Counted from the first letter of the stretch, positions 2,132-35,308 are shown. The stretch: DNA of 35,308 nt from Macrostomum lignano (GCA_002269645.1 NIVC01000565.1:1-35308), one strand, 5' to 3'. The notes: generated from the letters alone by a model not told the origin. A program made the numbers and translations.

Positions 2132-2332
2132 CTGCAATGCATCGAATGACAAAGTTGCTGCAGTTGATGCTGGAGCTGGGGCAGACTGCCTTGCAGATCT
2201 GACCATCGGGGCAGACGCCACTACCTTCGCCATCAGCGCCGCAGGGTGACACGCAGTCGCACGTTGGGCAGCCATTGGCGTCATTCACGTAGCCGTAGCG
2301 GCACTTCAGCTGGCATCGACTTGGTTGACACT
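2132..2332 (-). CDS. Exon: 12-Cys antistasin-like module 2
   Basis: CQPSRCQLKCRYGYVNDANGCPTCDCVSPCG...CPDGQICKAVCPSSSINCSNFVIRC, with antistasin CxxxCxxGYxxDxNGCxxCxC pattern. CAG and GTAATT ends, 201 nt, phase 1-1. Confidence 0.88.
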
Positions 2333-2520
2333 CTGCAAATTGGATCATGTTTGAAACGGTGATTGCATCGGTCTCGAGAATTTTTAATGACCCCTATATG
2401 TTAGTCACATTTGCAGTCATACGCTCGTAGTATACATAGTAGTAGTTGCGTAACACTTTCAAACAGGCACTCCATGGATTCAAAATCCCGATGTCAATAA
2501 CCTGATAGCTCAATGCTTAC

Positions 2521-2928
2521 TAGACAGAACAGTTACATTGACGCGGTTGGACTCGGCCGTCTCCAGCCCGTTGCCTAGGCGGCAGAAGTACCGCCCGGCG
2601 TCCTCGCGACGCAGAGCCGCCAGATGTAGCGGGCCTGAAGCGCCAATCGGCGTCGGCTGCGGTCGCCCAGCACCTCCTTGTACCAGAACGTCCAGTACGG
2701 CGCCGGGTGCCCACCAAGGGACGCACAGGTCAACAGGAGTGAGTCACCGACGGAGAGCTCAACCGAAGTGGACTCAGTGCTGGCGGCTGCCATGGCCACC
2801 GCGCCGGAGAGGGGTTCGCGGTACTGGACTAGGACAGTGCGAGAGTCCGGCTGGCCGATGCTGTTGCCAGCCTGGCAGAGGTACACGCCCTCGGCGCCCG
2901 GTTGAGCTGTTAGGCGCAGCCTGGCACC
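2521..2928 (-). CDS. Exon: C-half of Ig2 and all of Ig3, with apparent 1-nt deletion at ~2673
   Basis: GARLRLTAQPGAEGVYLCQAGNSIG...LTCASLGGHPAPYWTFWYKE, then in a shifted frame GAGRPQPTPIGASGPLHLAALRREDAGRYFCRLGNGLETAESNRVNVTVL. The exon is 408 nt but its phases (0 to 1) require 409. Confidence 0.8.
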
Positions 2929-2992
2929 CTGCGCGTCGCAATGAGGATGACAATAAGGATGAGTGAGATTCTTTCCACAACCTTGGAAAATA

Positions 2993-3170
2993 TTAACCCG
3001 AATTTTTCGACCGGATGTTTTTGACTCGACCCGGATCTAGACAGGATAAAATAAACCCAAACCAAACCACCGTAAATACGTTATTTAGGAGCTTAAAAAG
3101 ATTTGGACCACTCCGATTGGGTCAGTTCACTATCAGTTCACCTAGAAACCAGGTCAATTTTTCGGGTTAA
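2993..3170. mobile_element. Putative ~170-bp non-autonomous piggyBac-like MITE in intron
   Basis: TTAA|CCCGAA...TTCGGG|TTAA (TTAA at 2993-2996 and 3167-3170). The imperfect inverted repeat extends to a gacc motif at both ends. TTAA duplication with CCC ends is typical of piggyBac. Confidence 0.45.
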
Positions 3171-3641: not shown

Positions 3642-3963
3642 CTCAGCCAGGGGCCCCAGCTGGAGCTGGTCGTATCGGAACCACCGCACCGTGGGCGGCG
3701 GCTGGCCCCGGACCTCGCACACCAGCAGTGCAGTCTGGTTCCGACTCGTCAACGGCAGGCCGGAAGTCGTCACTCCATTGATTCTGGCCGGAGACAGCAC
3801 GCTTAGTCGGACGGTGTTGAATACGAGGTCACCGTTACCATGACAACGATAGGCGCCAGAATCAGAGAGCTCGGCGTGAGCGAACCACAGGGCGCTACCA
3901 GGCGGGTCAGACGGCTGATTGTCGTCGTCAAGACTGACTCGATCGTCGAGTCCGATTGAAATC
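3642..3963 (-). CDS. Exon: C-half of Ig1 and N-half of Ig2
   Basis: LWFAHAELSDSGAYRC (DxGxYxC motif), then LLVCEVRGQPPPTVRWFR. 322 nt, phase 2 to 0; donor GAG/GTACTA is weak-looking. Confidence 0.85.
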
Positions 3964-4300: not shown

Positions 4301-4466
4301 CCGTCTTTTTTCCATACGACGGCTGCCACCGAAGTCTCAGACTGCGGCTCTGTCCCGAGACGAACTGCGCGGCGGCAGGCCAATCGAACCGGCTGTCCTT
4401 CGATTGCTGTCACGAACTCGGACGATCCTTCGTCCTTCGAGTCAACGCGAGGGGATGCAGTGCGAG
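4301..4466 (-). CDS. Exon: N-terminal half of Ig domain 1
   Basis: EFVTAIEGQPVRLACRR...VVWKKDG. Acceptor cctctacttgCAG, donor GTGCGT, 166 nt, phase 1 to 2. Confidence 0.85.
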
Positions 4467-4611: not shown

Positions 4612-4812
4612 AGGTCTCGCAGGTGACATTCATCTCAGCGCACTGCAAGCCACTGCAGTGCACCCTGCACCGCTCCAACGGCCCACAGCGACCCGCAGCG
4701 GCGCACGGATCGTGGCAGCGGCAGACGCGGCAGCCGGACTCGGGCAGGGTGAATCGCCGGTGTCTGCCGTAGGGACAGTCTGCCGGGCACTCGTCCAGCC
4801 TCGGGTTGCATT
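4612..4812 (-). CDS. Exon: 12-Cys antistasin-like module 1 (not in the ORF track)
   Basis: CNPRLDECPADCPYGRHRRFTLPESGCRVCRCHDPCAAAGRCGPLERCRVHCSGLQCAEMNVTCET. Acceptor tttttCAG, donor GTAAAT, 201 nt, phase 1-1. Confidence 0.85.
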
Positions 4813-4893: not shown

Positions 4894-6021
4894 GTTTGCT
4901 CTCTACAGGGCAGAGATTCTCACAGTCGCTGAGACTCAAGAAAGCATTGCCCCGGAGCGTGGAGTTGCCGGCCGAGCAGAATTTTCTACCCAGCACGCGT
5001 TTGCACATCCGGCTGGCGGCGCTGAAGCTGTACACGTCGCGCTGGAGCTCTGTGGGACAGACACTACGAGTACTTCGGCCGGGTGCTGGAGCCTCATCGC
5101 CAATATCGGAATGACAAATTTCCGGATTCCAAGTTTTCGGCAGTGCCGCTTGATTTTGAATGATAGATCGTTTAGCCCTCTGAGCCGAAGCCGCTGCGCC
5201 TGCAGTTTGAATCGCTTGCGTGTCGGCCTCGGGTGCGCACCTGGCCTGGCACTCCCGGTAGCTGCCGAACCTGTTGGGGTTTCCACCACAGCCGTTGTAC
5301 AGGAAGCGGCTGCACTGCTTGGTGTCGTAGTTGTAGTAGTACCGCCACGACTGGGCCAGCAGTGGATTGGGACCGCCGCACAGGCGACCTTCCGAGACAG
5401 GGTGGAGGCACGGGTCATTTAACAGCGGTGTCTCGCACACATTGCGGCACTCGGCCAGGCTCAGAAAGCGGTTTCGATTGCCCAGGCAGCCGCTGTAGCG
5501 CATCTCCTGGCAGCTGCCTGTGTCTGGATCGTAGCTGAACCGCAGAAGCGACTCGCCGCACGGCCCCGGGTCGGGCGCCAGGTAGCAGACGCGCTGCCGA
5601 AGCTCTGGGTAGCAGTGCCTCTTGCAGTCCGACCAGGTCACGAAGAAGTTCATGCCTTTGCGGCCTACGCCGCGCACCACCGAATCGCGGCAGGTGACGT
5701 CGCTTGCGTCGAAAAAATAGCTGACGTAGGCTGAGGATGCGTGCGACGACTTCTGGGAGGGCAGCGTTGGCGGCAGCTGGCAGCGGTCCTGCAGCATGTC
5801 CACCGAGGCCGATCGGCCAGAGCACAGGGCCCGGCGCTGGTGGCAGTCCCTACGGTTAGCGAATAGCTGCTGAGAATGTCGAGCGGCGCAGACAGCCGCG
5901 ACGGACACCTCTTCGCAGTCTGAAGTTGGATCGCCAAGCTGCCAGCGGGTGACCATCTGGACGTTTGGATTATCGTTGTCGATGCAGCCTGGCGGCCGTT
6001 GGCAAGACGGCTGAGATGCTC
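4894..6021 (-). CDS. Exon: five Kunitz-like domains (K6-K10) plus linker with RAKR
   Basis: Acceptor tttttttgCAG at 6022-6024 extends ORF 4859-5956 upstream (RASQPSCQRPPGC...). Two domains are clearly canonical (VCYLAPDPGPC...GCLGNRNRF...; PCLHPVSEGRLC...GCGGNPNRF...). Donor GTGAGC, 1128 nt, phase 1-1. Confidence 0.92.
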
Positions 6022-6046
6022 CTGCAAAAAAATAGTAAGCATTCTT

Positions 6047-6496
6047 ATAGCTACTGCTATTGCTACAGCTACTGCTACAGCTACAGCTACTGCTACTGCT
6101 ACAGCTACTGCTACAGCTACAGCTACAGCTACAGCTACAGCTACTGCTACAGCTACAGCTACAGCTACTGCTACAGCTATTACTACAGCTACTGCTACAG
6201 CTACAGCTACAGCTATAGCTACTGCTACAGCTACTGCTACCGCTACAGCTACAGCTACTGCTACAGCTACAGCTACAGCTACAGCTACAGCTACTGCTAC
6301 AGCTATTACTACAGCTACCGCTACAGCTACAGCTACAGCTACAGCTACAGCTACAGCTACTGCTACAGCTACTGCTACAGCTATTACTACAGCTACCGCT
6401 ACAGCTACAGCTACAGCTACAGCTACAGCTACAGCTACAGCTACAGCTACAGCTACAGCTACAGCTACAGCTACAGCTACTGCTACAGCTACTGCT
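6047..6496. repeat. Intronic hexamer microsatellite (CTACAG/CTACTG)n, ~75 units
   Basis: Directly visible. It produces the spurious poly-AV, poly-AT and poly-YS ORFs in the track. Confidence 0.97.
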
Positions 6497-6629
6497 CTTT
6501 GCAATTCAGTCTCTTCTTGGCTGAAAATTTCACACTGAGCATGTAAACTCCAATGCACTAACTACTGTAATAGTATTACTACTACTGCTCCAAAAATGTC
6601 CAACAGCATCACCAACTCCATCAGCTCAC

Positions 6630-7103
6630 TGAAATTCAGGCACGCATAGTGACAGTCCTCTTCAGTCTCGAAGTTGTTTGCGTTGCCTCCGCAGCCGGTG
6701 AATTTAAATGTCCGACATTGGCCGGTCCTTTCATCGAAGAAGTAGCGGGTCAGCCTCACAAGGTCAGACATCGGGCAGGAGCCAGCGGATGGTGGCAGCT
6801 GGCAGACGCTGCTGAAGTTGGACTCTGGCAGCAGCAGCGGCGCCGGGCCGCCGACCCACCGGCTAGAATGGCGGCGGCTGCTGGACTCCAGTGGGCCGCC
6901 GCTGCGCGCCGCGGCTTGTTGAGCGCCAGATCCCGCGGTGCTGCCGCAGGTTCGCTCGCAGTCCATCAATCCGAGGAAGCGGTTCCGGTTGCCCTGGCAA
7001 CCGCTGTAGACGAATTCGCGACAGGTGCGCTCATTTGCATCGTAGAAGAAACGGACGTGACTCTCCTGGCAGGAGCCTTCATCCATGGGCAGGCTGCACA
7101 CGT
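6630..7103 (-). CDS. Exon: two canonical Kunitz domains (K4, K5) with G/S/A-rich linker
   Basis: VCSLPMDEGSCQESHVRFFYDANERTCREFVYSGCQGNRNRFLGLMDCERTC and VCQLPPSAGSCPMSDLVRLTRYFFDERTGQCRTFKFTGCGGNANNFETEEDCHYAC. 474 nt, phase 1-1, donor GTGAGC. Confidence 0.92.
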
Positions 7104-7550
7104 CTGCCGGTTGAATATCGAATGAAAACTGTCTACTAAGAATATACTGACGCATAGCAACTGCCTTGTTCTTTATTTAAACAAATAAACCCTTTTAAAT
7201 GTCTATACTATCAGCGCCTCATGTCGACCCACCGTCACCGATTCGGGTAAAAATCACCTCAAAACAATTCTGTCCCCAGAACCAACATGAATGAACTGCA
7301 CGACCTCAGCAATCCGAGCTAGGAATGCAAACAGCAATGAACGCAACAATAAAGGCCAGGTCGCAAGACGATCGTCCGAACCTCGGCATGAATGAAGGCC
7401 AAAGCAACTTCTCAGCTAAAATCCCTCGGTCTAAATGTAACGACATCTATCCAGAAAATACATTCTCTGTGTAACTAAGGTGCAATAAAGTCCTAAAATT
7501 TTTGTCGCCCTGATTTAGGAGACTCCAAGCTGGCACCCCAAAACCCTCAC

Positions 7551-7742
7551 CGGCCAGCGACTCGGGCATGCAGTGCTGTCTGCACTCATCCAGGCTGCCG
7601 AAGCTGTTGCCAGCCAGCGAGTCGTTCGGGCAGACTGTAAGGCGAATACACGCCCTGTGCTGTTCACTGTAAAAGTACATGTCCCTCGGGAACTCGCAGT
7701 GCCTCGCGTCCGAGTCCACGTCGAAGGATGCGTAACAGCGGT
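7551..7742 (-). CDS. Exon: Kunitz domain (K3)
   Basis: DRCYASFDVDSDARHCEFPRDMYFYSEQHRACIRLTVCPNDSLAGNSFGSLDECRQHC. CAG and GTGAGG ends, 192 nt, phase 1-1. Confidence 0.85.
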
Positions 7743-7898
7743 CTGAGACGGACAGATTTGTTCGATTTACGAGTAGCTTCAGTTGATAACTTTAGTTATT
7801 TATGTTAAACATGCAGCAGTTAACATGTACAACAGCTTGCTAGGAACAAACATAAAAAATGCCACAATGCTGTCCCAGGCCACCAGCCACGCACTCAC

Positions 7899-8144
7899 CC
7901 TGCACAATGCTGTCCGTGGCCTGACTGACGCAAGTCTCGCTGCAGGTGACTCTATCCACAAAGAAGCTGACTTTTCCAACGAGGCTTCGACACTCCGGGC
8001 TTTCCTTGAGAGCAACGGGCAGACAGGCGCCTATCTTGGCCGAGTAGCGGTAGTGCTGGACGCTGCCCCGGTCTGTCGTCTCTGCTGAGAAGTCCAAGCA
8101 GGCCTGAGCTGCGCTGGTCATTGTGCAGCGCGAGTTCAAATCCT
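7899..8144 (-). CDS. Exon: divergent 6-Cys Kunitz-like domain (K2)
   Basis: RCTMTSAAQACLDFS...YRYSAKIGACLPV...ECRSLVGKVSFFVDRVTCSETC. Acceptor ctcttctatctctCAG, donor GTGAGT, 246 nt, phase 1-1. Confidence 0.8.
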
Positions 8145-8329
8145 CTGAGAGATAGAAGAGAGGGACTTAGCAAACTTTCTCTGGTTCGAATGGTTCACTA
8201 GTTGACTTAGCACGAACCTGCAGTCTTCGCAAGCAATGCACATGTCATGCTCGTAGGTTGACGAGAAATTACACTAACAGTCAAATTATAATTTAACAGT
8301 GTTTTCAAGACCCCTGAAGTCAATCTTAC

Positions 8330-8539
8330 TTTTGAATCGGTCCAAGCAGTTCTTCTCGCACATCTCTTGCGTGTCAAAGCGATTTGCTGAGCCGTTACCA
8401 ATAACCGAGTATTCGTAGGGGGCGCAACTACCGTCGTTTGGCAAGTAGCCAAAGGCATGCCGGGCGGTCTTCGCCGTGTTGGACAGCATCGATTGCACAC
8501 CGCTGAACCCTCCAGTCTCCTGAAGACAGGGCTCGTAGC
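8330..8539 (-). CDS. Exon: degenerate 4-Cys Kunitz domain (K1)
   Basis: GYEPCLQETGGFSGVQSMLSNTAKTARHAFGYLPNDGSCAPYEYSVIGNGSANRFDTQEMCEKNCL, with Kunitz N-R-F-x5-C-x3-C tail. CAG and GTAAGA ends, 210 nt, phase 1-1. Confidence 0.8.
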
Positions 8540-8688: not shown

Positions 8689-9058
8689 CAAGTACCCGGG
8701 GCGCCGCCTGAGATCGTCTAACCCGATTAGACCGGTCGCACTGAACGCTCTTCCAGGCGGGGCCCTCATCCTGGCTGCGGCAGAAGCTCAGTGGCACCTG
8801 GCGATCGCCAATTCGACAAGACGGCGTCATGATCCGCAGACCCAGAGCTCTACTGCAGTTTCCAGGCACCCAGTGCAGAGTGGACTGTCCAAGCGGGTCG
8901 CAGTTGTCCCTGTAGCTGCAGCTCTGCAGCATATCCGAAGCAAAATCCTCGGTGAGCTGATCCATGCAGGTCCTGGTGGGCAGCAACTCGTTGAAGACGC
9001 TCACGCAGATGATTTCCCTGGTCTGATAGCTCTCGTTGGAGCTGTGGTCGCACATGCA
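8689..9058 (-). CDS. Exon: two divergent ADAMTS-type TSP1-like repeats plus linker with RVRR
   Basis: CMCDHSSNESYQTREIICVSVFNELLPTRTC...SCSYRDNC and HWVPGNCSRALGLRIMTPSCRIGDRQVPLSFC...VQC. Acceptor ttttcctaaAG, donor GTAAGT, 370 nt, phase 0 to 1. Confidence 0.8.
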
Positions 9059-9148: not shown

Positions 9149-9240
9149 CTCCGACCATGGAGTGTAGGTCAATCTGGAAAATCTGTCAGAATCGTTAATA
9201 GTCAGGTAGGGATAATCAACCTGGTCTGGCTCTCCCGTAA
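9149..9240 (-). CDS. Exon: linker and start of TSP1-like repeat (TGEPDQVDYPYLTINDSDRFSRLTYTPWSE)
   Basis: tttttttCAG acceptor, GTATGT donor. Only one of three frames is open; it ends in WSE, which joins C of the next exon to give the TSP1 WSxC motif. Confidence 0.8.
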
Positions 9241-9308: not shown

Positions 9309-9327
9309 TTGCGATTTCACGAACGTT
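9309..9327 (-). CDS. 19-nt micro-exon (NVREIA + first base of I), phase 0 to 1
   Basis: Acceptor ctttttgttgCAG (9328-9330) and donor GTGAGT (9303-9308). Its leftover A completes ATT with the next exon, which is open in only that frame. Confidence 0.7.
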
Positions 9328-9650
9328 CTGCAACAAAAAGGCAATAAGACAAGAGTCAAATCTACGACTATTCAAAAAACAGTCAAAGCTGGAAAAAAAC
9401 TACTTGCCCCGAAATCGACTTCCGGCATGAAAAGAGAATCTCTAGTGGGAGTGGGCCGCAACACTGAAATTGTTATCAAAGTACTTAAAAAACTTCTTGA
9501 ATAAAAATATTATAGCACTAAAAATTTATAGCACTACTAAAATCAGTAATATCAATGTTTATACGCCCGAAACAGAAGACTTTGTTACTAAATCCGATTT
9601 TTCAGTAAAGCCAACAATATCAATGTTTAGTGCTCGCAGACGGTCGAAAA

Positions 9651-12600
9651 GCTCAATGTCGGGCCTGTCGCTTCTGGTACACTCACGCTCGGCGTCTCGA
9701 CACTGGCGGCGCTTGTGGCTTCCGGTTCCGCAGTGGAAACAGTAGACGCAGACGCAGTGCTCGCAGTCTCGGCCTCGCTGCTGGGCGTCGCGCCACTCAC
9801 GGTCGAGCTCTCAACTGTCTGTGTCGACTCCGTGCTCAATGTCGGGCCTGTCGCTTCTGGTACACTCACGCTCGGCGTCTCGACACTGGCGGCGCTTGTG
9901 GCTTCCGGTTCCGCAGTGGAAACAGTAGACGCAGACGCAGTGCTCGCAGTCTCGGCCTCGCTGCTGGGCGTCGCGCCACTCACGGTCGAGCTCTCAACTG
10001 TCTGTGTCGACTCCGTGCTCAATGTCGGGCCTGTCGCTTCTGGTACACTCACGCTCGGCGTCTCGACACTGGCGGCGCTTGTGGCTTCCGGTTCCGCAGT
10101 GGAAACAGTAGACGCAGACGCAGTGCTCGCAGTCTCGGCCTCGCTGCTGGGCGTCGCGCCACTCACGGTCGAGCTCTCAACTGTCTGTGTCGACTCCGTG
10201 CTCAATGTCGGGCCTGTCGCTTCTGGTACACTCACGCTCGGCGTCTCGACACTGGCGGCGCTTGTGGCTTCCGGTTCCGCAGTGGAAACAGTAGACGCAG
10301 ACGCAGTGCTCGCAGTCTCGGCCTCGCTGCTGGGCGTCGCGCCACTCACGGTCGAGCTCTCAACTGTCTGTGTCGACTCCGTGCTCAATGTCGGGCCTGT
10401 CGCTTCTGGTACACTCACGCTCGGCGTCTCGACACTGGCGGCGCTTGTGGCTTCCGGTTCCGCAGTGGAAACAGTAGACGCAGACGCAGTGCTCGCAGTC
10501 TCGGCCTCGCTGCTGGGCGTCGCGCCACTCACGGTCGAGCTCTCAACTGTCTGTGTCGACTCCGTGCTCAATGTCGGGCCTGTCGCTTCTGGTACACTCA
10601 CGCTCGGCGTCTCGACACTGGCGGCGCTTGTGGCTTCCGGTTCCGCAGTGGAAACAGTAGACGCAGACGCAGTGCTCGCAGTCTCGGCCTCGCTGCTGGG
10701 CGTCGCGCCACTCACGGTCGAGCTCTCAACTGTCTGTGTCGACTCCGTGCTCAATGTCGGGCCTGTCGCTTCTGGTACACTCACGCTCGGCGTCTCGACA
10801 CTGGCGGCGCTTGTGGCTTCCGGTTCCGCAGTGGAAACAGTAGACGCAGACGCAGTGCTCGCAGTCTCGGCCTCGCTGCTGGGCGTCGCGCCACTCACGG
10901 TCGAGCTCTCAACTGTCTGTGTCGACTCCGTGCTCAATGTCGGGCCTGTCGCTTCTGGTACACTCACGCTCGGCGTCTCGACACTGGCGGCGCTTGTGGC
11001 TTCCGGTTCCGCAGTGGAAACAGTAGACGCAGACGCAGTGCTCGCAGTCTCGGCCTCGCTGCTGGGCGTCGCGCCACTCACGGTCGAGCTCTCAACTGTC
11101 TGTGTCGACTCCGTGCTCAATGTCGGGCCTGTCGCTTCTGGTACACTCACGCTCGGCGTCTCGACACTGGCGGCGCTTGTGGCTTCCGGTTCCGCAGTGG
11201 AAACAGTAGACGCAGACGCAGTGCTCGCAGTCTCGGCCTCGCTGCTGGGCGTCGCGCCACTCACGGTCGAGCTCTCAACTGTCTGTGTCGACTCCGTGCT
11301 CAATGTCGGGCCTGTCGCTTCTGGTACACTCACGCTCGGCGTCTCGACACTGGCGGCGCTTGTGGCTTCCGGTTCCGCAGTGGAAACAGTAGACGCAGAC
11401 GCAGTGCTCGCAGTCTCGGCCTCGCTGCTGGGCGTCGCGCCACTCACGGTCGAGCTCTCAACTGTCTGTGTCGACTCCGTGCTCAATGTCGGGCCTGTCG
11501 CTTCTGGTACACTCACGCTCGGCGTCTCGACACTGGCGGCGCTTGTGGCTTCCGGTTCCGCAGTGGAAACAGTAGACGCAGACGCAGTGCTCGCAGTCTC
11601 GGCCTCGCTGCTGGGCGTCGCGCCACTCACGGTCGAGCTCTCAACTGTCTGTGTCGACTCCGTGCTCAATGTCGGGCCTGTCGCTTCTGGTACACTCACG
11701 CTCGGCGTCTCGACACTGGCGGCGCTTGTGGCTTCCGGTTCCGCAGTGGAAACAGTAGACGCAGACGCAGTGCTCGCAGTCTCGGCCTCGCTGCTGGGCG
11801 TCGCGCCACTCACGGTCGAGCTCTCAACTGTCTGTGTCGACTCCGTGCTCAATGTCGGGCCTGTCGCTTCTGGTACACTCACGCTCGGCGTCTCGACACT
11901 GGCGGCGCTTGTGGCTTCCGGTTCCGCAGTGGAAACAGTAGACGCAGACGCAGTGCTCGCAGTCTCGGCCTCGCTGCTGGGCGTCGCGCCACTCACGGTC
12001 GAGCTCTCAACTGTCTGTGTCGACTCCGTGCTCAATGTCGGGCCTGTCGCTTCTGGTACACTCACGCTCGGCGTCTCGACACTGGCGGCGCTTGTGGCTT
12101 CCGGTTCCGCAGTGGAAACAGTAGACGCAGACGCAGTGCTCGCAGTCTCGGCCTCGCTGCTGGGCGTCGCGCCACTCACGGTCGAGCTCTCAACTGTCTG
12201 TGTCGACTCCGTGCTCAATGTCGGGCCTGTCGCTTCTGGTACACTCACGCTCGGCGTCTCGACACTGGCGGCGCTTGTGGCTTCCGGTTCCGCAGTGGAA
12301 ACAGTAGACGCAGACGCAGTGCTCGCAGTCTCGGCCTCGCTGCTGGGCGTCGCGCCACTCACGGTCGAGCTCTCAACTGTCTGTGTCGACTCCGTGCTCA
12401 ATGTCGGGCCTGTCGCTTCTGGTACACTCACGCTCGGCGTCTCGACACTGGCGGCGCTTGTGGCTTCCGGTTCCGCAGTGGAAACAGTAGACGCAGACGC
12501 AGTGCTCGCAGTCTCGGCCTCGCTGCTGGGCGTCGCGCCACTCACGGTCGAGCTCTCAACTGTCTGTGTCGACTCCGTGCTCAATGTCGGGCCTGTCGCT

Positions 12601-27600: not shown

Positions 27601-30600
27601 GTCGCTTCTGGTACACTCACGCTCGGCGTCTCGACACTGGCGGCGCTTGTGGCTTCCGGTTCCGCAGTGGAAACAGTAGACGCAGACGCAGTGCTCGCAG
27701 TCTCGGCCTCGCTGCTGGGCGTCGCGCCACTCACGGTCGAGCTCTCAACTGTCTGTGTCGACTCCGTGCTCAATGTCGGGCCTGTCGCTTCTGGTACACT
27801 CACGCTCGGCGTCTCGACACTGGCGGCGCTTGTGGCTTCCGGTTCCGCAGTGGAAACAGTAGACGCAGACGCAGTGCTCGCAGTCTCGGCCTCGCTGCTG
27901 GGCGTCGCGCCACTCACGGTCGAGCTCTCAACTGTCTGTGTCGACTCCGTGCTCAATGTCGGGCCTGTCGCTTCTGGTACACTCACGCTCGGCGTCTCGA
28001 CACTGGCGGCGCTTGTGGCTTCCGGTTCCGCAGTGGAAACAGTAGACGCAGACGCAGTGCTCGCAGTCTCGGCCTCGCTGCTGGGCGTCGCGCCACTCAC
28101 GGTCGAGCTCTCAACTGTCTGTGTCGACTCCGTGCTCAATGTCGGGCCTGTCGCTTCTGGTACACTCACGCTCGGCGTCTCGACACTGGCGGCGCTTGTG
28201 GCTTCCGGTTCCGCAGTGGAAACAGTAGACGCAGACGCAGTGCTCGCAGTCTCGGCCTCGCTGCTGGGCGTCGCGCCACTCACGGTCGAGCTCTCAACTG
28301 TCTGTGTCGACTCCGTGCTCAATGTCGGGCCTGTCGCTTCTGGTACACTCACGCTCGGCGTCTCGACACTGGCGGCGCTTGTGGCTTCCGGTTCCGCAGT
28401 GGAAACAGTAGACGCAGACGCAGTGCTCGCAGTCTCGGCCTCGCTGCTGGGCGTCGCGCCACTCACGGTCGAGCTCTCAACTGTCTGTGTCGACTCCGTG
28501 CTCAATGTCGGGCCTGTCGCTTCTGGTACACTCACGCTCGGCGTCTCGACACTGGCGGCGCTTGTGGCTTCCGGTTCCGCAGTGGAAACAGTAGACGCAG
28601 ACGCAGTGCTCGCAGTCTCGGCCTCGCTGCTGGGCGTCGCGCCACTCACGGTCGAGCTCTCAACTGTCTGTGTCGACTCCGTGCTCAATGTCGGGCCTGT
28701 CGCTTCTGGTACACTCACGCTCGGCGTCTCGACACTGGCGGCGCTTGTGGCTTCCGGTTCCGCAGTGGAAACAGTAGACGCAGACGCAGTGCTCGCAGTC
28801 TCGGCCTCGCTGCTGGGCGTCGCGCCACTCACGGTCGAGCTCTCAACTGTCTGTGTCGACTCCGTGCTCAATGTCGGGCCTGTCGCTTCTGGTACACTCA
28901 CGCTCGGCGTCTCGACACTGGCGGCGCTTGTGGCTTCCGGTTCCGCAGTGGAAACAGTAGACGCAGACGCAGTGCTCGCAGTCTCGGCCTCGCTGCTGGG
29001 CGTCGCGCCACTCACGGTCGAGCTCTCAACTGTCTGTGTCGACTCCGTGCTCAATGTCGGGCCTGTCGCTTCTGGTACACTCACGCTCGGCGTCTCGACA
29101 CTGGCGGCGCTTGTGGCTTCCGGTTCCGCAGTGGAAACAGTAGACGCAGACGCAGTGCTCGCAGTCTCGGCCTCGCTGCTGGGCGTCGCGCCACTCACGG
29201 TCGAGCTCTCAACTGTCTGTGTCGACTCCGTGCTCAATGTCGGGCCTGTCGCTTCTGGTACACTCACGCTCGGCGTCTCGACACTGGCGGCGCTTGTGGC
29301 TTCCGGTTCCGCAGTGGAAACAGTAGACGCAGACGCAGTGCTCGCAGTCTCGGCCTCGCTGCTGGGCGTCGCGCCACTCACGGTCGAGCTCTCAACTGTC
29401 TGTGTCGACTCCGTGCTCAATGTCGGGCCTGTCGCTTCTGGTACACTCACGCTCGGCGTCTCGACACTGGCGGCGCTTGTGGCTTCCGGTTCCGCAGTGG
29501 AAACAGTAGACGCAGACGCAGTGCTCGCAGTCTCGGCCTCGCTGCTGGGCGTCGCGCCACTCACGGTCGAGCTCTCAACTGTCTGTGTCGACTCCGTGCT
29601 CAATGTCGGGCCTGTCGCTTCTGGTACACTCACGCTCGGCGTCTCGACACTGGCGGCGCTTGTGGCTTCCGGTTCCGCAGTGGAAACAGTAGACGCAGAC
29701 GCAGTGCTCGCAGTCTCGGCCTCGCTGCTGGGCGTCGCGCCACTCACGGTCGAGCTCTCAACTGTCTGTGTCGACTCCGTGCTCAATGTCGGGCCTGTCG
29801 CTTCTGGTACACTCACGCTCGGCGTCTCGACACTGGCGGCGCTTGTGGCTTCCGGTTCCGCAGTGGAAACAGTAGACGCAGACGCAGTGCTCGCAGTCTC
29901 GGCCTCGCTGCTGGGCGTCGCGCCACTCACGGTCGAGCTCTCAACTGTCTGTGTCGACTCCGTGCTCAATGTCGGGCCTGTCGCTTCTGGTACACTCACG
30001 CTCGGCGTCTCGACACTGGCGGCGCTTGTGGCTTCCGGTTCCGCAGTGGAAACAGTAGACGCAGACGCAGTGCTCGCAGTCTCGGCCTCGCTGCTGGGCG
30101 TCGCGCCACTCACGGTCGAGCTCTCAACTGTCTGTGTCGACTCCGTGCTCAATGTCGGGCCTGTCGCTTCTGGTACACTCACGCTCGGCGTCTCGACACT
30201 GGCGGCGCTTGTGGCTTCCGGTTCCGCAGTGGAAACAGTAGACGCAGACGCAGTGCTCGCAGTCTCGGCCTCGCTGCTGGGCGTCGCGCCACTCACGGTC
30301 GAGCTCTCAACTGTCTGTGTCGACTCCGTGCTCAATGTCGGGCCTGTCGCTTCTGGTACACTCACGCTCGGCGTCTCGACACTGGCGGCGCTTGTGGCTT
30401 CCGGTTCCGCAGTGGAAACAGTAGACGCAGACGCAGTGCTCGCAGTCTCGGCCTCGCTGCTGGGCGTCGCGCCACTCACGGTCGAGCTCTCAACTGTCTG
30501 TGTCGACTCCGTGCTCAATGTCGGGCCTGTCGCTTCTGGTACACTCACGCTCGGCGTCTCGACACTGGCGGCGCTTGTGGCTTCCGGTTCCGCAGTGGAA

Positions 30601-33600
30601 ACAGTAGACGCAGACGCAGTGCTCGCAGTCTCGGCCTCGCTGCTGGGCGTCGCGCCACTCACGGTCGAGCTCTCAACTGTCTGTGTCGACTCCGTGCTCA
30701 ATGTCGGGCCTGTCGCTTCTGGTACACTCACGCTCGGCGTCTCGACACTGGCGGCGCTTGTGGCTTCCGGTTCCGCAGTGGAAACAGTAGACGCAGACGC
30801 AGTGCTCGCAGTCTCGGCCTCGCTGCTGGGCGTCGCGCCACTCACGGTCGAGCTCTCAACTGTCTGTGTCGACTCCGTGCTCAATGTCGGGCCTGTCGCT
30901 TCTGGTACACTCACGCTCGGCGTCTCGACACTGGCGGCGCTTGTGGCTTCCGGTTCCGCAGTGGAAACAGTAGACGCAGACGCAGTGCTCGCAGTCTCGG
31001 CCTCGCTGCTGGGCGTCGCGCCACTCACGGTCGAGCTCTCAACTGTCTGTGTCGACTCCGTGCTCAATGTCGGGCCTGTCGCTTCTGGTACACTCACGCT
31101 CGGCGTCTCGACACTGGCGGCGCTTGTGGCTTCCGGTTCCGCAGTGGAAACAGTAGACGCAGACGCAGTGCTCGCAGTCTCGGCCTCGCTGCTGGGCGTC
31201 GCGCCACTCACGGTCGAGCTCTCAACTGTCTGTGTCGACTCCGTGCTCAATGTCGGGCCTGTCGCTTCTGGTACACTCACGCTCGGCGTCTCGACACTGG
31301 CGGCGCTTGTGGCTTCCGGTTCCGCAGTGGAAACAGTAGACGCAGACGCAGTGCTCGCAGTCTCGGCCTCGCTGCTGGGCGTCGCGCCACTCACGGTCGA
31401 GCTCTCAACTGTCTGTGTCGACTCCGTGCTCAATGTCGGGCCTGTCGCTTCTGGTACACTCACGCTCGGCGTCTCGACACTGGCGGCGCTTGTGGCTTCC
31501 GGTTCCGCAGTGGAAACAGTAGACGCAGACGCAGTGCTCGCAGTCTCGGCCTCGCTGCTGGGCGTCGCGCCACTCACGGTCGAGCTCTCAACTGTCTGTG
31601 TCGACTCCGTGCTCAATGTCGGGCCTGTCGCTTCTGGTACACTCACGCTCGGCGTCTCGACACTGGCGGCGCTTGTGGCTTCCGGTTCCGCAGTGGAAAC
31701 AGTAGACGCAGACGCAGTGCTCGCAGTCTCGGCCTCGCTGCTGGGCGTCGCGCCACTCACGGTCGAGCTCTCAACTGTCTGTGTCGACTCCGTGCTCAAT
31801 GTCGGGCCTGTCGCTTCTGGTACACTCACGCTCGGCGTCTCGACACTGGCGGCGCTTGTGGCTTCCGGTTCCGCAGTGGAAACAGTAGACGCAGACGCAG
31901 TGCTCGCAGTCTCGGCCTCGCTGCTGGGCGTCGCGCCACTCACGGTCGAGCTCTCAACTGTCTGTGTCGACTCCGTGCTCAATGTCGGGCTGTCGCTTCT
32001 GGTACACTCACGCTCGGCGTCTCGACACTGGCGGCGCTTGTGGCTTCCGGTTCCGCAGTGGAAACAGTAGACGCAGACGCAGTGCTCGCAGTCTCGGCCT
32101 CGCTGCTGGGCGTCGCGCCACTCACGGTCGAGCTCTCAACTGTCTGTGTCGACTCCGTGCTCAATGTCGGGCCTGTCGCTTCTGGTACACTCACGCTCGG
32201 CGTCTCGACACTGGCGGCGCTTGTGGCTTCCGGTTCCGCAGTGGAAACAGTAGACGCAGACGCAGTGCTCGCAGTCTCGGCCTCGCTGCTGGGCGTCGCG
32301 CCACTCACGGTCGAGCTCTCAACTGTCTGTGTCGACTCCGTGCTCAATGTCGGGCCTGTCGCTTCTGGTACACTCACGCTCGGCGTCTCGACACTGGCGG
32401 CGCTTGTGGCTTCCGGTTCCGCAGTGGAAACAGTAGACGCAGACGCAGTGCTCGCAGTCTCGGCCTCGCTGCTGGGCGTCGCGCCACTCACGGTCGAGCT
32501 CTCAACTGTCTGTGTCGACTCCGTGCTCAATGTCGGGCCTGTCGCTTCTGGTACACTCACGCTCGGCGTCTCGACACTGGCGGCGCTTGTGGCTTCCGGT
32601 TCCGCAGTGGAAACAGTAGACGCAGACGCAGTGCTCGCAGTCTCGGCCTCGCTGCTGGGCGTCGCGCCACTCACGGTCGAGCTCTCAACTGTCTGTGTCG
32701 ACTCCGTGCTCAATGTCGGGCCTGTCGCTTCTGGTACACTCACGCTCGGCGTCTCGACACTGGCGGCGCTTGTGGCTTCCGGTTCCGCAGTGGAAACAGT
32801 AGACGCAGACGCAGTGCTCGCAGTCTCGGCCTCGCTGCTGGGCGTCGCGCCACTCACGGTCGAGCTCTCAACTGTCTGTGTCGACTCCGTGCTCAATGTC
32901 GGGCCTGTCGCTTCTGGTACACTCACGCTCGGCGTCTCGACACTGGCGGCGCTTGTGGCTTCCGGTTCCGCAGTGGAAACAGTAGACGCAGACGCAGTGC
33001 TCGCAGTCTCGGCCTCGCTGCTGGGCGTCGCGCCACTCACGGTCGAGCTCTCAACTGTCTGTGTCGACTCCGTGCTCAATGTCGGGCCTGTCGCTTCTGG
33101 TACACTCACGCTCGGCGTCTCGACACTGGCGGCGCTTGTGGCTTCCGGTTCCGCAGTGGAAACAGTAGACGCAGACGCAGTGCTCGCAGTCTCGGCCTCG
33201 CTGCTGGGCGTCGCGCCACTCACGGTCGAGCTCTCAACTGTCTGTGTCGACTCCGTGCTCAATGTCGGGCCTGTCGCTTCTGGTACACTCACGCTCGGCG
33301 TCTCGACACTGGCGGCGCTTGTGGCTTCCGGTTCCGCAGTGGAAACAGTAGACGCAGACGCAGTGCTCGCAGTCTCGGCCTCGCTGCTGGGCGTCGCGCC
33401 ACTCACGGTCGAGCTCTCAACTGTCTGTGTCGACTCCGTGCTCAATGTCGGGCCTGTCGCTTCTGGTACACTCACGCTCGGCGTCTCGACACTGGCGGCG
33501 CTTGTGGCTTCCGGTTCCGCAGTGGAAACAGTAGACGCAGACGCAGTGCTCGCAGTCTCGGCCTCGCTGCTGGGCGTCGCGCCACTCACGGTCGAGCTCT

Positions 33601-35256
33601 CAACTGTCTGTGTCGACTCCGTGCTCAATGTCGGGCCTGTCGCTTCTGGTACACTCACGCTCGGCGTCTCGACACTGGCGGCGCTTGTGGCTTCCGGTTC
33701 CGCAGTGGAAACAGTAGACGCAGACGCAGTGCTCGCAGTCTCGGCCTCGCTGCTGGGCGTCGCGCCACTGTCGAGCTCTCAACTGTCTGTGTCGACTCCG
33801 TGCTCAATGTCGGGCCTGTCGCTTCTGGTACACTCACGCTCGGCGTCTCGACACTGGCGGCGCTTGTGGCTTCCGGTTCCGCAGTGGAAACAGTAGACGC
33901 AGACGCAGTGCTCGCAGTCTCGGCCTCGCTGCTGGCTCGCGCCGCCACTCACGGTCGAGCTCTCAACTGTCTGTGTCGACTCCGTGCTCAATCGCGGGCC
34001 TGTCTTCTGGTACACTCACGCTCGGCGTCTCGACACTGGCGGCGCTTGTGGCTTCCGGTTCCGCAGTGGAAACAGTAGACGCAGACGCAGTGCTCGCAGT
34101 CTCGGCCTCGCTGCTGGGCGTCGCGCCACTCACGGTCGAGCTCTCAACTGTCTGTGTCGACTCCGTGCTCAATGTCGGGCCTGTCGCTTCTGGTACACTC
34201 ACGCTCGGCGTCTCGACACTGGCGGCGCTTGTGGCTTCCGGTTCCGCAGTGGAAACAGTAGACGCAGACGCAGTGCTCGCAGTCTCGGCCTCGCTGCTGG
34301 GCGTCGCGCCACTCACGGTCGAGCTCTCAACTGTCTGTGTCGACTCCGTGCTCAATGTCGGGCCTGTCGCTTCTGGTACACTCACGCTCGGCGTCTCGAC
34401 ACTGGCGGCGCTTGTGGCTTCCGGTTCCGCAGTGGAAACAGTAGACGCAGACGCAGTGCTCGCAGTCTCGGCCTCGCTGCTGGGCGTCGCGCCACTCACG
34501 GTCGAGCTCTCAACTGTCTGTGTCGACTCCGTGCTCAATGTCGGGCCTGTCGCTTCTGGTACACTCACGCTCGGCGTCTCGACACTGGCGGCGCTTGTGG
34601 CTTCCGGTTCCGCAGTGGAAACAGTAGACGCAGACGCAGTGCTCGCAGTCTCGGCCTCGCTGCTGGGCGTCGCGCCACTCACGGTCGAGCTCTCAACTGT
34701 CTGTGTCGACTCCGTGCTCAATGTCGGGCCTGTCGCTTCTGGTACACTCACGCTCGGCGTCTCGACACTGGCGGCGCTTGTGGCTTCCGGTTCCGCAGTG
34801 GAAACAGTAGACGCAGACGCAGTGCTCGCAGTCTCGGCCTCGCTGCTGGGCGTCGCGCCACTCACGGTCGAGCTCTCAACTGTCTGTGTCGACTCCGTGC
34901 TCAATGTCGGGCCTGTCGCTTCTGGTACACTCACGCTCGGCGTCTCGACACTGGCGGCGCTTGTGGCTTCCGGTTCCGCAGTGGAAACAGTAGACGCAGA
35001 CGCAGTGCTCGCAGTCTCGGCCTCGCTGCTGGGCGTCGCGCCACTCACGGTCGAGCTCTCAACTGTCTGTGTCGACTCCGTGCTCAATGTCGGGCCTGTC
35101 GCTTCTGGTACACTCACGCTCGGCGTCTCGACACTGGCGGCGCTTGTGGCTTCCGGTTCCGCAGTGGAAACAGTAGACGCAGACGCAGTGCTCGCAGTCT
35201 CGGCCTCGCTGCTGGGCGTCGCCACTCACGGTCGAGCTCTCAAACTGTCTGTGTCG
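9651..35256. repeat. Tandem array, 183-bp unit, ~140 copies, ~64% GC
   Basis: tccggttccg recurs at 9721, 9904 and onward (period 183). The 60-nt display lines repeat every 3660 bp (20 units). One SalI (GTCGAC) and one SacI (GAGCTC) site per unit. Confidence 0.99.
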
Positions 35257-35308
35257 TGGCGCTTTTCTTGGGTTTCCATGTTGAAGCAGTAGTTTGCTGT
35301 GTAGTGCT
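9687..35308 (-). CDS. Giant mucin-like (PTS) exon: ~140 x 61-aa repeat STESTQTVESSTVSGATPSSEAETASTASASTVSTAEPEATSAASVETPSVSVPEATGPTL
   Basis: Minus-strand ORF 9627-31982 plus frameshifted continuations up to 35225. Unit has 15 S, 13 T, 10 A, 8 E, 6 V, 5 P. Same strand as the downstream exons. The unique sequence at 35243-35308 also reads S/T-rich (STTQQTTASTWKPKKSATTQTV). The 3' boundary is uncertain; 9687 is the most downstream GTGAGT donor. Confidence 0.75.

What the first reader, a model, noticed from the sequence alone, without database searches (positions are those of the whole stretch)
2132..35308. Papilin/lacunin-like protein with a ~8,500-aa homogeneous mucin spacer encoded in a >25 kb exon
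Seen: ~140 x 61-aa repeats lie on the same strand as, and upstream of, TSP1-Kunitz x10-antistasin-Ig x3-antistasin exons, giving >9,800 aa in the window. Established: papilins have an S/T-rich region before their Kunitz battery but are at most ~3-4 thousand aa; the largest well-known human exons (TTN ~17 kb, MUC16 ~21 kb) are shorter than this one. Inference: at ~0.25 nm per residue for O-glycosylated chains, the spacer would extend ~2 micrometres, making a mucin-papilin hybrid that could act as a long tether, mucus or adhesive scaffold, or basement-membrane spacer.
Basis: partly seen in the sequence, partly recalled or inferred. Interest (0 to 1): 0.85.

Follow-up and report, generated by a model that had tools for sequence, protein, structure and literature searches.

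The report
Flatworm papilin-like gene with giant mucin array
This is a locus of the flatworm Macrostomum lignano in which a 25.6-kb array of near-identical 183-bp units, encoding an acidic serine/threonine-rich 61-residue repeat, lies directly upstream of a known Kunitz/Ig 'papilin-like' gene. The two probably form one giant secreted glycoprotein, but the splice join, the copy number and the '25 kb exon' are not proven by this assembly.

Summary
**Observation: mostly real.**
- Window 9651-35256 is a 183-bp x 140 tandem array. 22,340 nt of it (122 units) are perfectly periodic.
- Its only open minus-strand frame encodes an acidic mucin-type 61-mer (46% S+T).
- Downstream on the same strand, 14 GT/GC-AG exons (9327-1758) encode about 1,360 aa:
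  - two degenerate TSR-like stretches with no Pfam hit;
  - 10 Kunitz-like domains, 7 of them Pfam-significant;
  - a weak antistasin, 3 Ig domains and a strong antistasin.

**Source.** The organism is Macrostomum lignano. The non-repeat part is the public RNA-seq-guided model PAA80802.1 (UniProt name 'Papilin'). UniProt fragments A0A1I8IMX4 and A0A1I8F1R4 already fuse repeats to the Kunitz part.

**Corrections.**
- The mucin frame is continuous for only 22.4 kb (7,451 codons). The upstream 3.3 kb has four or five frameshifting indel sites.
- The frame hits a stop 8 codons past the array, so fusion needs a splice. Phase-0 GTGAGT donors do fit acceptor 9327.
- Another assembly of this locus breaks inside the array and carries in-frame variant units that are absent here.

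**Verdict.** A coding mucin domain of the same papilin-like gene is the best reading (about 0.6). Papilin membership is unproven because there is no ADAMTS cassette in the window and no PLAC. Interest is moderate.

The parts
35257..35308 (-). Unique 52-nt flank upstream (5') of the array. In the mucin frame it reads STTQQTTASTWKPKKSATTQTV, is open to the window edge, and runs straight into unit 1.
   Evidence: three-frame translation; sequence
31991..35256 (-). The 5'-most ~18 array units. They match the consensus except for frameshifting indels at ~31990 (-1), ~33770 (-4), ~33935-34000 (cluster, net -1) and ~35225-35250 (-2/+1). The mucin frame hops between all three frames here.
9651..31990 (-). 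A perfectly periodic run of 122 identical 183-bp units (22,340 nt). It encodes the 61-aa acidic S/T-rich repeat (S15 T13 A10 E8 V6 P5 G2 Q1 L1; no Cys, aromatic or basic residue). Each unit holds two phase-0 GTGAGT donor-like sites.
9627..9629 (-). TAA stop of the mucin frame, 8 codons after the last unit (...TLSFSTVCEH*). It is used only if no splice removes it.
9681..9686 (-). The last copy of the strong donor-like site AGC|GTGAGT (first intron base 9686, phase 0). It fits acceptor 9327 in frame (...SVETPS|NVREIA...). A weak phase-1 donor GTGA|GTGTAC (first intron base 9682) would fit exon 9463-9408.
   Evidence: sequence and phase arithmetic; no RNA evidence
9408..9463 (-). Exon E0 (56 nt) of the public RNA-seq-guided model. 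It has acceptor tttcag|TG at 9463, the annotated ATG at 9428 and GC donor GGG|GCAAGT (intron 9407-9328). The first-stage reader did not see it.
9309..9327 (-). Exon E1 (19 nt, NVREIA-).
9149..9240 (-). Exon E2 (...TYTPWSE), the start of the first degenerate TSR-like stretch.
8689..9058 (-). Exon E3, with two degenerate TSR-like Cys-rich stretches and a furin-type motif RVRR|S (8725-8711).
   Evidence: (no Pfam hit)
8330..8539 (-). Exon E4, Kunitz-like domain 1 (lacks Cys2/Cys4).
7899..8144 (-). Exon E5, Kunitz-like domain 2 (divergent).
7551..7742 (-). Exon E6, Kunitz-like domain 3 (divergent).
6630..7103 (-). Exon E7, Kunitz domains 4 and 5 (strong Pfam hits).
6049..6496 (.). (AGCTAC)n hexamer microsatellite, 75 copies, inside intron 6629-6022. 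It is not coding, although it is open as (CS)n and (AV)n.
   Evidence: the public protein skips it
4894..6021 (-). Exon E8, Kunitz-like domains 6-10, with furin-type motif RAKR|S (5179-5165).
4612..4812 (-). Exon E9, a Cys-rich antistasin-like domain (17.8 bits, below the Pfam threshold).
4301..4466 (-). Exon E10, first half of Ig1.
3642..3963 (-). Exon E11, second half of Ig1 and first half of Ig2.
2521..2928 (-). Exon E12, second half of Ig2 plus Ig3. The window lacks one G at 2668 (GGGG->GGG), which gives a frameshift not present in GCA_002269645.1.
2132..2332 (-). Exon E13, C-terminal Antistasin domain (35.9 bits), with strong donor CAG|GTAATT at 2131.
1758..1816 (-). Terminal coding exon E14 (VTASSNSTDRTGLLVQLKR*, stop 1760-1758). 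ATTAAA lies at 1666.

Best explanation
The window is part of one Macrostomum lignano gene for a very large secreted extracellular-matrix or mucus glycoprotein.

- **N-terminus.** The signal peptide, and possibly more domains, lie beyond 35308.
- **Middle.** This is a huge exon, or nearly all of one, built from a 183-bp unit. It encodes an acidic S/T/A/E/P/V 61-mer. That is a classic PTS or 'mucin' domain, expected to be densely O-glycosylated, extended and polyanionic (net -8 per unit).
- **C-terminus.** A donor in or near the last unit is spliced to the small exons at 9463/9327. This attaches about 1,360 aa of disulfide-rich sequence: two decayed TSR-like stretches, ten Kunitz-like domains, an antistasin-like domain, three Ig domains and a terminal antistasin.
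- **Likely roles.** The C-terminal module is laid out like the back half of papilin and probably anchors or cross-links the protein in matrix. No Kunitz domain has a basic P1 residue, so trypsin-type inhibition is unlikely. The mucin domain would provide a hydrated spacer or gel.

**Shown:** the array, its frame and composition, the exon structure, the domains, the organism, and identity with public models.

**Inferred:** that the array is translated, that it is spliced to the Kunitz part, that the upstream frameshifts are assembly errors, glycosylation, and function.

The exact copy number (140) and the perfect homogeneity should be treated as properties of this assembly.
For: 1. The unit is 183 = 61 codons. 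Exactly one sense frame is open, and it is mucin-like. None of 7,824 open frames from 20,000 dinucleotide shuffles reaches its S+T content or its low entropy.
2. Array GC is 0.64, like the exons (0.61) and unlike the flanking non-coding DNA (~0.40).
3. The 52-nt unique flank 5' of the array is open and S/T-rich in the same frame.
4. In assembly GCA_002269645.1, at the same locus (0 mismatches over 9.6 kb), two variant units replace part of the unit with unrelated sequence. That sequence is +36 nt, stop-free in the mucin frame and of similar composition.
5. The array is on the same strand, 188 nt upstream of the first annotated exon.
6. The public RNA-seq-guided protein PAA80802.1 starts MPEVDFG... 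and has no hydrophobic signal sequence. Yet it is built wholly of secreted-type disulfide domains, so its real start must be upstream.
7. The last GTGAGT donor (9686) is phase 0 and acceptor 9327 is phase 0. This gives ...SVETPS|NVREIAITGEPDQ... in frame.
8. All differences between the two assemblies in the flank are indels, and one of them is the Ig3 frameshift. Indels in the upstream units are therefore plausibly errors.
9. Independent public gene models already join the repeats to the Kunitz part: A0A1I8IMX4 at the same locus with ~26 units, and A0A1I8F1R4, a paralogue.
10. The same worm makes a 14,794-aa repetitive glycosylated secreted protein, so genes of this scale are expressed in this species (PMC6410801).
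Against: - No RNA evidence was available here for transcription of the array or for any array-to-exon junction.
- The mucin frame stops 8 codons after the array.
- The RNA-guided exon E0 (9463-9408) needs one base from the upstream exon. The strong array donors are phase 0. Only a weak donor (GTGA|GTGTAC) would fit E0, and E0's frame has a stop at ~9510.
- Four or five frameshifting indel sites lie in the 5' 3.3 kb.
- Three of the six frames of the unit are open, so openness alone is weak evidence. A synonymous-codon test had no power.
- The fused UniProt models look like ab initio predictions. They hop between frames and use different, mutually inconsistent junctions.
- The array in the other assembly of this locus contains variant units absent here, so at least one assembly is wrong about the array.
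Confidence: 0.6

Rival explanations
1. The array is an intronic, or otherwise untranslated, satellite. The papilin-like gene has its signal peptide and N-terminal exons beyond 35308. A >26-kb intron containing the array is spliced out to acceptor 9463 (or 9327).
For: - Exon E0 of the RNA-guided model is open from its acceptor in the annotated frame. It needs one base from an upstream exon, which the strong array donors cannot supply.
- The mucin frame is broken in the 5' 3.3 kb and stops right after the array.
- 15% of this genome is simple or tandem repeat (PMC5730564).
- The public RNA-guided CDS excludes the array.
Against: - The unit is 3n, with a strongly non-random mucin-type open frame.
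- The variant units are in frame and differ by a multiple of three bases.
- The unique flank is in frame and S/T-rich.
- Array GC is exon-like.
- The mean intron in this species is ~1.1-1.4 kb.
- The public model was built on a contig that ends inside an indel-ridden copy of the array, so leaving the array out of the CDS says little.
Confidence: 0.15
2. There are two cistrons. A stand-alone mucin gene ends at TAA 9627 (C-terminus ...TLSFSTVCEH). The Kunitz/Ig gene is a separate mRNA that starts at or near 9463, possibly by spliced-leader trans-splicing from a polycistronic precursor, and is translated from ATG 9428.
For: - There is a stop 8 codons after the array.
- A good acceptor at 9463 lies 35 nt upstream of the annotated ATG.
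- 38.8% of M. lignano genes are trans-spliced, and ~7% of transcripts are polycistronic precursors (PMC5730564).
- The public model starts at that ATG.
Against: - The resulting Kunitz/Ig/antistasin protein would have no signal peptide. That is implausible for about 90 disulfide-bonded cysteines.
- No AATAAA or ATTAAA lies between 9627 and 9463 (sequence).
- In-phase strong donors fit acceptor 9327.
Confidence: 0.15
3. The size and perfection of the array, and hence the '25 kb exon' and '8,500 aa', are partly products of assembly. The true locus may have a different copy number and interspersed variant units. The 122 identical units would then reflect consensus polishing of a repeat that reads could not anchor. 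This is compatible with any of the readings above.
For: - Two other assemblies of this genome end their contigs inside this array, with 28 and ~26 units.
- GCA_002269645.1 has two variant units within the last 20 units, where the window has none. Array-only public models carry six or more variant traces.
- All errors in the window's array cluster in the last 3.3 kb next to the window edge.
- The window has at least one indel error in an exon.
Against: - The normal units are also near-identical in the other assemblies. There are 2 substitutions in 28 units, and the in-frame protein units are identical.
- The ML2-based model of the same locus shows no variant unit in its ~26 units, which agrees with the window.
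- The window does reach unique sequence on both sides.
Confidence: 0.35

Closest known systems
Papilin (Drosophila Ppn, C. elegans MIG-6, Manduca lacunin).
   Same: The domain order in the back half matches: a battery of 8-10 Kunitz domains, then a small Cys-rich inhibitor-type domain, then 2-3 Ig domains, then a terminal Cys-rich domain. Papilins and 'papilin-like' proteins are the best non-Macrostomum hits, at 24-28% identity. UniProt names the public model 'Papilin'. Weak TSR-like stretches precede the Kunitz battery.
   Different: - No TSP_1, ADAMTS Cys-rich, ADAMTS spacer or TSP1_ADAMTS domain is detectable in the window, though they could lie beyond 35308.
- Antistasin replaces WAP.
- Antistasin replaces the defining PLAC domain at the C-terminus.
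- A mucin array of thousands of residues is not a feature of P0008 or P0010.
Gel-forming and tethered mucins with giant central PTS exons (for example human MUC16, MUC4, MUC5AC/B; from general knowledge)
   Same: It has a tandem S/T/P-rich repeat of tens of residues and very high inter-unit identity. The unit is encoded without introns, flanked by Cys-rich domains, and its length is difficult to assemble.
   Different: - The flanking domains are Kunitz/Ig/antistasin, not vWD/C8/TIL/CK or SEA.
- The repeat is unusually acidic (13% Glu) and rich in Ala and Val.
- The repeat has no homologue outside M. lignano.
Mlig-ap2 and Mlig-ap1, adhesive proteins of M. lignano (PMC6410801)
   Same: They come from the same species. 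They are giant (14,794 and 5,407 aa), repetitive, secreted and glycosylated, with Cys-rich interaction domains at the ends.
   Different: They are different genes. They have vWD/TIL/LDLa/TSP1/EGF/C-lectin domains and repeats of 255/221 aa or KR-rich regions. They have no Kunitz or antistasin.
Multi-Kunitz proteins of arthropods (P0006 from a tick, 20 Kunitz; P0007 from a tardigrade, 10 Kunitz)
   Same: A long battery of Kunitz domains; these are among the top hits.
   Different: They have no Ig, antistasin or mucin array.

Membership tests
Papilin / lacunin / MIG-6 | N-terminal 'papilin cassette' homologous to the ADAMTS ancillary region (TSP_1 + Cys-rich + ADAMTS spacer) | tested here: inconclusive
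   Pfam finds none in any exon of the window. Canonical papilins P0008 and P0010 show it clearly. The gene's 5' end is outside the window, so absence cannot be concluded.
Papilin / lacunin / MIG-6 | TSP1_ADAMTS repeats immediately before the Kunitz battery | tested here: inconclusive
   There is no Pfam hit at E<=1 for the 161 aa before Kunitz 1, and no PDB sequence hit. BLAST to the TSR region of P0008 gives E=0.017, with PWSEC..QTREIIC aligned to PWSAC..QTRLVVC.
Papilin / lacunin / MIG-6 | Battery of Kunitz/BPTI domains | tested here: met
   PF00014 at 259 bits with 7 significant stretches; 10 domains by cysteine pattern.
Papilin / lacunin / MIG-6 | Ig (I-set/C2) domains after the Kunitz battery | tested here: met
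   Three Ig stretches: Ig_3 at 78 bits and I-set at 67.5 bits.
Papilin / lacunin / MIG-6 | C-terminal PLAC domain | tested here: not met
   The C-terminal exons (2332-2132 and 1816-1758) give only Antistasin, at 35.9 bits. The stop codon is in the window.
Mucin-type (PTS-domain) glycoprotein | Long tandem repeats rich in Ser/Thr/Pro in an open reading frame | tested here: met
   46% S+T and 8% P. The frame is open for 7,451 codons and is non-random against shuffles.
Mucin-type (PTS-domain) glycoprotein | Repeat domain is transcribed and translated, and the protein is secreted (signal peptide) | not testable with these tools
   No RNA or proteomic data could be queried. The 5' end lies beyond 35308.
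Mucin-type (PTS-domain) glycoprotein | Dense O-glycosylation | not testable with these tools
   This needs lectin or mass-spectrometry work.
Inhibitory Kunitz (BPTI-like trypsin inhibitors) | Basic P1 residue (Lys/Arg) after Cys2 | tested here: not met
   By inspection, the P1 residues are L, E, Q, P, G, G and P. Domains 1 and 7 lack Cys2/Cys4 altogether.
Antistasin-domain proteins | Pfam PF02822 above the gathering score | tested here: met
   The C-terminal domain scores 35.9 bits against a cut-off of 21.2. The internal one scores 17.8 bits, below the cut-off.
Non-coding satellite DNA | No constraint on reading frame (unit length and variants not multiples of three; no meaningful ORF) | tested here: not met
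   The unit is 183 = 3x61, the variant unit is +36 nt and in frame, and there is a mucin-like ORF.

The most novel reading that the evidence does not exclude
The assembly is right and the fusion is real. One M. lignano gene would then encode a protein of more than 10,000 aa. In it, a single coding exon of about 25.6 kb holds 140 almost identical units (122 identical to the base), which implies very recent expansion or intense concerted evolution. The exon forms a ~2-micrometre polyanionic O-glycan brush, tethered to matrix by a papilin-type Kunitz/Ig module. This would be one of the longest and most homogeneous coding exons described in an animal, and a domain combination (mucin + papilin back half + antistasin) not described before.
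Probability: 0.3. Interest if true: 0.6.

Novelty: new variant of a known kind. Interest (0 to 1): 0.4.

Why it matters
- **Biology.** If the fusion is real, it shows that a basement-membrane-type scaffold (papilin-like) can be turned into a giant mucin by expanding one lineage-specific repeat. It would add a second class of giant secreted glycoprotein to a flatworm that is a model for reversible bioadhesion, regeneration and mucus-based locomotion.
- **Candidate function.** A polyanionic, micrometre-long glycoprotein is a plausible component of mucus, of the glycocalyx/basement membrane or of secretions. It could be tested directly by RNAi and in situ hybridisation in this tractable animal.
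- **Annotation.** Public annotation handles the locus badly.
  - One model is truncated and has no signal peptide.
  - Others hop between frames and are named 'CCHC-type domain-containing protein' from an out-of-frame artefact.
- **Assembly quality.** The locus is a good test case for how assemblers and polishers treat long, perfect coding repeats.

Tried and rejected
1. **Synonymous-codon (RSCU) test.** I scored the three open frames of the unit against codon usage of the 1,226 non-repeat codons. The scores were 0.0, -2.5 and -3.1 bits, so the test had no discriminating power.
2. **Crude splice-aware gene finder.**
   - It over-called micro-exons and read the (GTAGCT)n microsatellite as a (CS)n coding stretch.
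   - This was corrected by hand and confirmed against PAA80802.1.
3. **Pfam on the array.** Pfam on the mucin repeat and on the other open or near-open frames of the unit found nothing meaningful. The 'CCHC zinc knuckle' pattern CFHCGTGSHKRRQC lies in a frame with one stop per unit and is not a Pfam zf-CCHC hit.
4. **N-terminal 161 aa.** Pfam and PDB sequence searches found no TSP1.
5. **Homologues of the repeat.**
   - The word-indexed search and the exhaustive HMMER search returned only M. lignano models.
   - No transcript-derived protein bridging the array and unique sequence was found.
6. **Genomic DNA for the fused UniProt model.** A look-up for A0A1I8F1R4 found nothing on record.
7. **Literature.**
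   - No paper mentions Mlig025764, a Macrostomum papilin, or a Kunitz-mucin protein.
   - Three papers' supplements do not list the gene.
   - Mlig-ap1 and Mlig-ap2 were considered and rejected as identities.
8. **RNA genes.** Rfam and tRNA scans found nothing.
9. **Error-rate argument.** I considered arguing from indel rates that the perfect 22 kb must be artificial. I dropped it as a firm claim, because only one of the eight single-base differences in the flank can be assigned to the window.
Full report
**1. What is in the sequence**

- Tandem Repeats Finder reports a single large array at 9651-35256. It has period 183, 140.0 copies and 99% matches.
- The first 122 units, counted from 9651, are identical to the base. 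The perfect periodic run is 9651-31990, 22,340 nt.
- All variation is indels, clustered in the 3.3 kb next to the high-coordinate edge:
  - -1 at ~31990;
  - -4 at ~33770;
  - a messy cluster at ~33935-34000;
  - -2/+1 in the last unit.
- Only 52 nt of non-repeat sequence follow before the window ends.
- Array GC is 0.64. The exons are at 0.61 and the flanking non-coding DNA is at ~0.40.

**2. Reading frames of the array**

- Three of the six frames of the unit lack a stop: two on the plus strand and one on the minus strand.
- The minus-strand frame reads TESTQTVESSTVSGATPSSEAETASTASASTVSTAEPEATSAASVETPSVSVPEATGPTLS.
- Its composition is S15 T13 A10 E8 V6 P5 G2 Q1 L1. It has no Cys and no aromatic or basic residue, and net charge is -8 per unit.
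- In 20,000 dinucleotide-preserving shuffles of the unit, 7,824 frames were open. None reached 46% S+T or so low an amino-acid entropy. The mucin-like frame is therefore not a by-product of base composition.
- The two plus-strand frames are the usual open antisense frames and match nothing meaningful.
- As assembled, the mucin frame is continuous only from 31982 down to 9630, which is 7,451 codons. Above that it hops through all three frames.
- It ends at TAA 9629-9627, eight codons past the last unit (...TLSFSTVCEH*).
The 'single >25 kb exon' and '>9,800 aa' hold only if the upstream indels are errors and a splice removes the stop.

**3. The downstream gene**

- A hand-curated model on the minus strand links 13 exons between 9327 and 2132 with canonical GT-AG introns and consistent phases. 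A terminal exon lies at 1816-1758, and ATTAAA is at 1666.
- Pfam results on the spliced product:

| Domain | Result |
|---|---|
| Kunitz_BPTI | 259 bits, 7 significant stretches; 10 domains by cysteine pattern |
| Ig | three domains |
| Antistasin, C-terminal | 35.9 bits, above the 21.2 cut-off |
| Antistasin, between Kunitz and Ig | 17.8 bits, below the cut-off |
| First 161 aa ('TSP1') | no hit even at E<=1 |

- The first 161 aa also gave no relevant PDB sequence match. There is only a weak BLAST match (E=0.017) in which PWSEC...QTREIIC aligns with a TSP1_ADAMTS repeat of a true papilin.
- The (AGCTAC)75 microsatellite at 6049-6496 lies in an intron.
- No Kunitz domain has Lys or Arg at P1, and two lack the Cys2-Cys4 disulfide.
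- Two furin-type motifs are present: RVRR|S at 8725-8711 and RAKR|S at 5179-5165.

**4. Identity of the locus**

- A database search with the spliced product found PAA80802.1 (BOX15_Mlig025764g1, Macrostomum lignano; UniProt A0A267G6C4, named 'Papilin'). It is 99% identical over 99% of the query.
- Its exon junctions are the same as mine.
This exon contains the annotated ATG (9428) and is joined to 9327 through a GC-AG intron.
- That annotation was built from RNA-seq with StringTie/TACO and the TBONE pipeline, on the Canu/Pilon assembly Mlig_3_7 of PacBio data (PMC5730564).
- The contig carrying it (NIVC01000566.1 of GCA_002269645.1) ends inside the array after 28 units.
- Its 9.6 kb of unique sequence differs from the window by 0 substitutions, 8 single-base indels and one ~20-nt short-tandem-repeat difference.
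- The only exonic difference is a G missing from the window at 2668, which causes the Ig3 frameshift.
- The window therefore comes from a different assembly of the same locus and contains at least one indel error.

**5. Other public models of this locus**

- Cluster look-up revealed UniProt A0A1I8IMX4 (2,922 aa, the same locus) and A0A1I8F1R4 (1,867 aa, a paralogue differing by a few per cent in the unique part).
- Both begin as fragments inside the same 61-aa repeat, with ~26 and ~10 units, and continue into the Kunitz-Ig part.
- Their junctions differ from each other and from the RNA-guided model, and they hop between frames. I treat them as ab initio predictions on error-containing contigs, not as evidence of splicing.
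- The name 'CCHC-type domain-containing protein' comes from the out-of-frame string CFHCGTGSHKRRQC. That frame has one stop per unit, and the string is not a Pfam zf-CCHC hit.
- An exhaustive HMMER search with 250 aa of the array found the repeat only in M. lignano models.

**6. Is the array coding, and is it the same gene?**

For:
- The unit is 61 codons, and the composition of its open frame is non-random.
- The 52-nt flank 5' of the array reads STTQQTTASTWKPKKSATTQTV in the same frame. It is open to the window edge and is interrupted only by the +1 indel in unit 1.
- In the Mlig_3_7 copy of the array, two units carry an unrelated 125-nt segment. It lengthens the unit by 36 nt, has no stop in the mucin frame, and reads DTSQSVTTPEIETESFTRIGQTAPSKVEDESTVEEDRSTVT. 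This is what a coding repeat variant looks like.
- The annotated protein has no signal-peptide-like hydrophobic stretch, although it consists only of secreted-type disulfide domains. Its true start must be upstream, and the array begins 188 nt upstream of its first exon.
- The array carries 279 GTGAGT sites on the minus strand and none on the plus strand. They are phase 0 in the mucin frame, and acceptor 9327 is phase 0. The last one (9686) gives ...SVETPS|NVREIAITGEPDQ... in frame.

Against:
- No RNA data could be queried.
- Exon 9463-9408 needs one base from its upstream partner, which only a weak donor (GTGA|GTGTAC, 9682) would provide. Its frame has a stop at ~9510.
- The frame stops right after the array.
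- The upstream units are frameshifted.
- The codon-usage test had no power.

I put the fused coding reading at about 0.6, the intronic or untranslated satellite reading at about 0.15, and two separate cistrons at about 0.15. The two-cistron reading is possible because spliced-leader trans-splicing is common in this species.

**7. How far to trust the array as assembled**

- Two other assemblies break inside this array.
- Mlig_3_7 has variant units at about the 15th and 20th unit from the 3' end, where the window has perfect units.
- An array-only public model shows at least six variant traces, and the paralogue shows one. The ML2 model of the same locus shows none in ~26 units, which agrees with the window.
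- Normal units are near-identical in every source. There are 2 substitutions in 28 units of L001.
- Extreme homogeneity is therefore probably real. The number 140 and the absence of variant units are not verified.
- The indel cluster next to the window edge looks like poorly supported consensus.

**8. Comparison with known families**

- Canonical papilins retrieved here (P0008, P0010) have this order: TSP_1, ADAMTS Cys-rich, ADAMTS spacer, TSP1_ADAMTS x3-6, Kunitz x8-10, (WAP), Ig x2-3, PLAC.
- The flatworm gene parallels the back half. It has TSR-like remnants, Kunitz x10, a small Cys-rich domain, Ig x3 and a terminal Cys-rich domain.
- It uses antistasin where papilins have WAP and PLAC, and no cassette is visible in the window.
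- PLAC was tested and not met. I therefore call the gene papilin-like in architecture, not a demonstrated papilin.
- The array is a typical PTS-type mucin domain in composition and organisation, but it is unusually acidic and is lineage-specific.
- It is not Mlig-ap1 or Mlig-ap2, the known giant adhesive proteins of this worm, which have different domains and repeat lengths (PMC6410801). Those proteins do show that proteins of ~15,000 aa are made in this species. The size claim is therefore notable but not unprecedented.

**9. Verdict**

- The finding is a new variant of known kinds: a papilin-like matrix protein plus a mucin domain. It is not described in the literature I could search, but it is partly present in public gene models.
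- Its most striking numbers depend on one assembly.
- Interest is 0.4.

Noticed in passing
window 6049-6496: An (AGCTAC)75 hexamer microsatellite lies inside the intron between Kunitz exons E7 and E8. On the minus strand it is open as (CS)n and (AV)n and can fool a gene finder into calling a Cys-Ser repeat. The public protein skips it.
   Followed up: yes
window 9651-35256, minus strand, frame +2 relative to the mucin frame: The out-of-frame translation contains CFHCGTGSHKRRQC, a perfect CX2CX4HX4C zinc-knuckle pattern, once per unit, in a frame with one stop per unit. This explains the UniProt names 'CCHC-type domain-containing protein' for A0A1I8IMX4 and A0A1I8H713. It is not a Pfam zf-CCHC hit, so the names are artefacts.
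   Followed up: yes
window 2668 (exon 2928-2521): One G is missing from a GGGG run relative to GCA_002269645.1. This frameshifts the third Ig domain. It is most likely an assembly indel error in the window.
   Followed up: yes
L001 (GCA_002269645.1 NIVC01000566.1) 1645-1770 and 2592-2717: Two variant array units carry an unrelated, AT-richer 125-nt segment. It adds 36 nt, is in frame and reads DTSQSVTTPEIETESFTRIGQTAPSKVEDESTVEEDRSTVT. The segment is absent from the window's 140 units. It begins with GTGAGT and ends with ACAG, so predictors may also treat it as an intron.
   Followed up: partly
window 9511-9566: A ~20-nt length difference between the two assemblies lies in an AT-rich short tandem duplication (TRF 16-mer x2.1 at 9502-9536), in the putative intron between the array and exon 9463-9408.
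   Followed up: partly
window 9328-9407: The first intron of the public RNA-guided model is GC-AG (GGG|GCAAGT...TTGCAG|AAC), 80 nt long.
   Followed up: partly
window 8711-8725 and 5165-5179: There are two furin/proprotein-convertase-type motifs. RVRR|S lies between the TSR-like region and Kunitz 1, and RAKR|S lies between Kunitz 9 and 10. They suggest the precursor could be cut into a mucin-bearing fragment and Kunitz/Ig fragments.
   Followed up: no
window 4894-8539 (Kunitz exons): None of the ten Kunitz-like domains has Lys or Arg at P1 (the residues are L, E, Q, P, G, G, P). Domains 1 and 7 lack the Cys2-Cys4 disulfide. Classical trypsin inhibition is therefore unlikely.
   Followed up: partly
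window 9651-35256: There are 279 consensus 5' splice-site hexamers (GTGAGT) on the minus strand of the array and none on the plus strand, two per unit, both in phase 0 of the mucin frame. If the array is an exon, splicing must ignore all but perhaps the last of them.
   Followed up: partly
window 1-41: A CT-rich low-complexity stretch (CCTCTTCTCTT-like, 2-3 copies) lies at the window start, in the region downstream of the gene.
   Followed up: no
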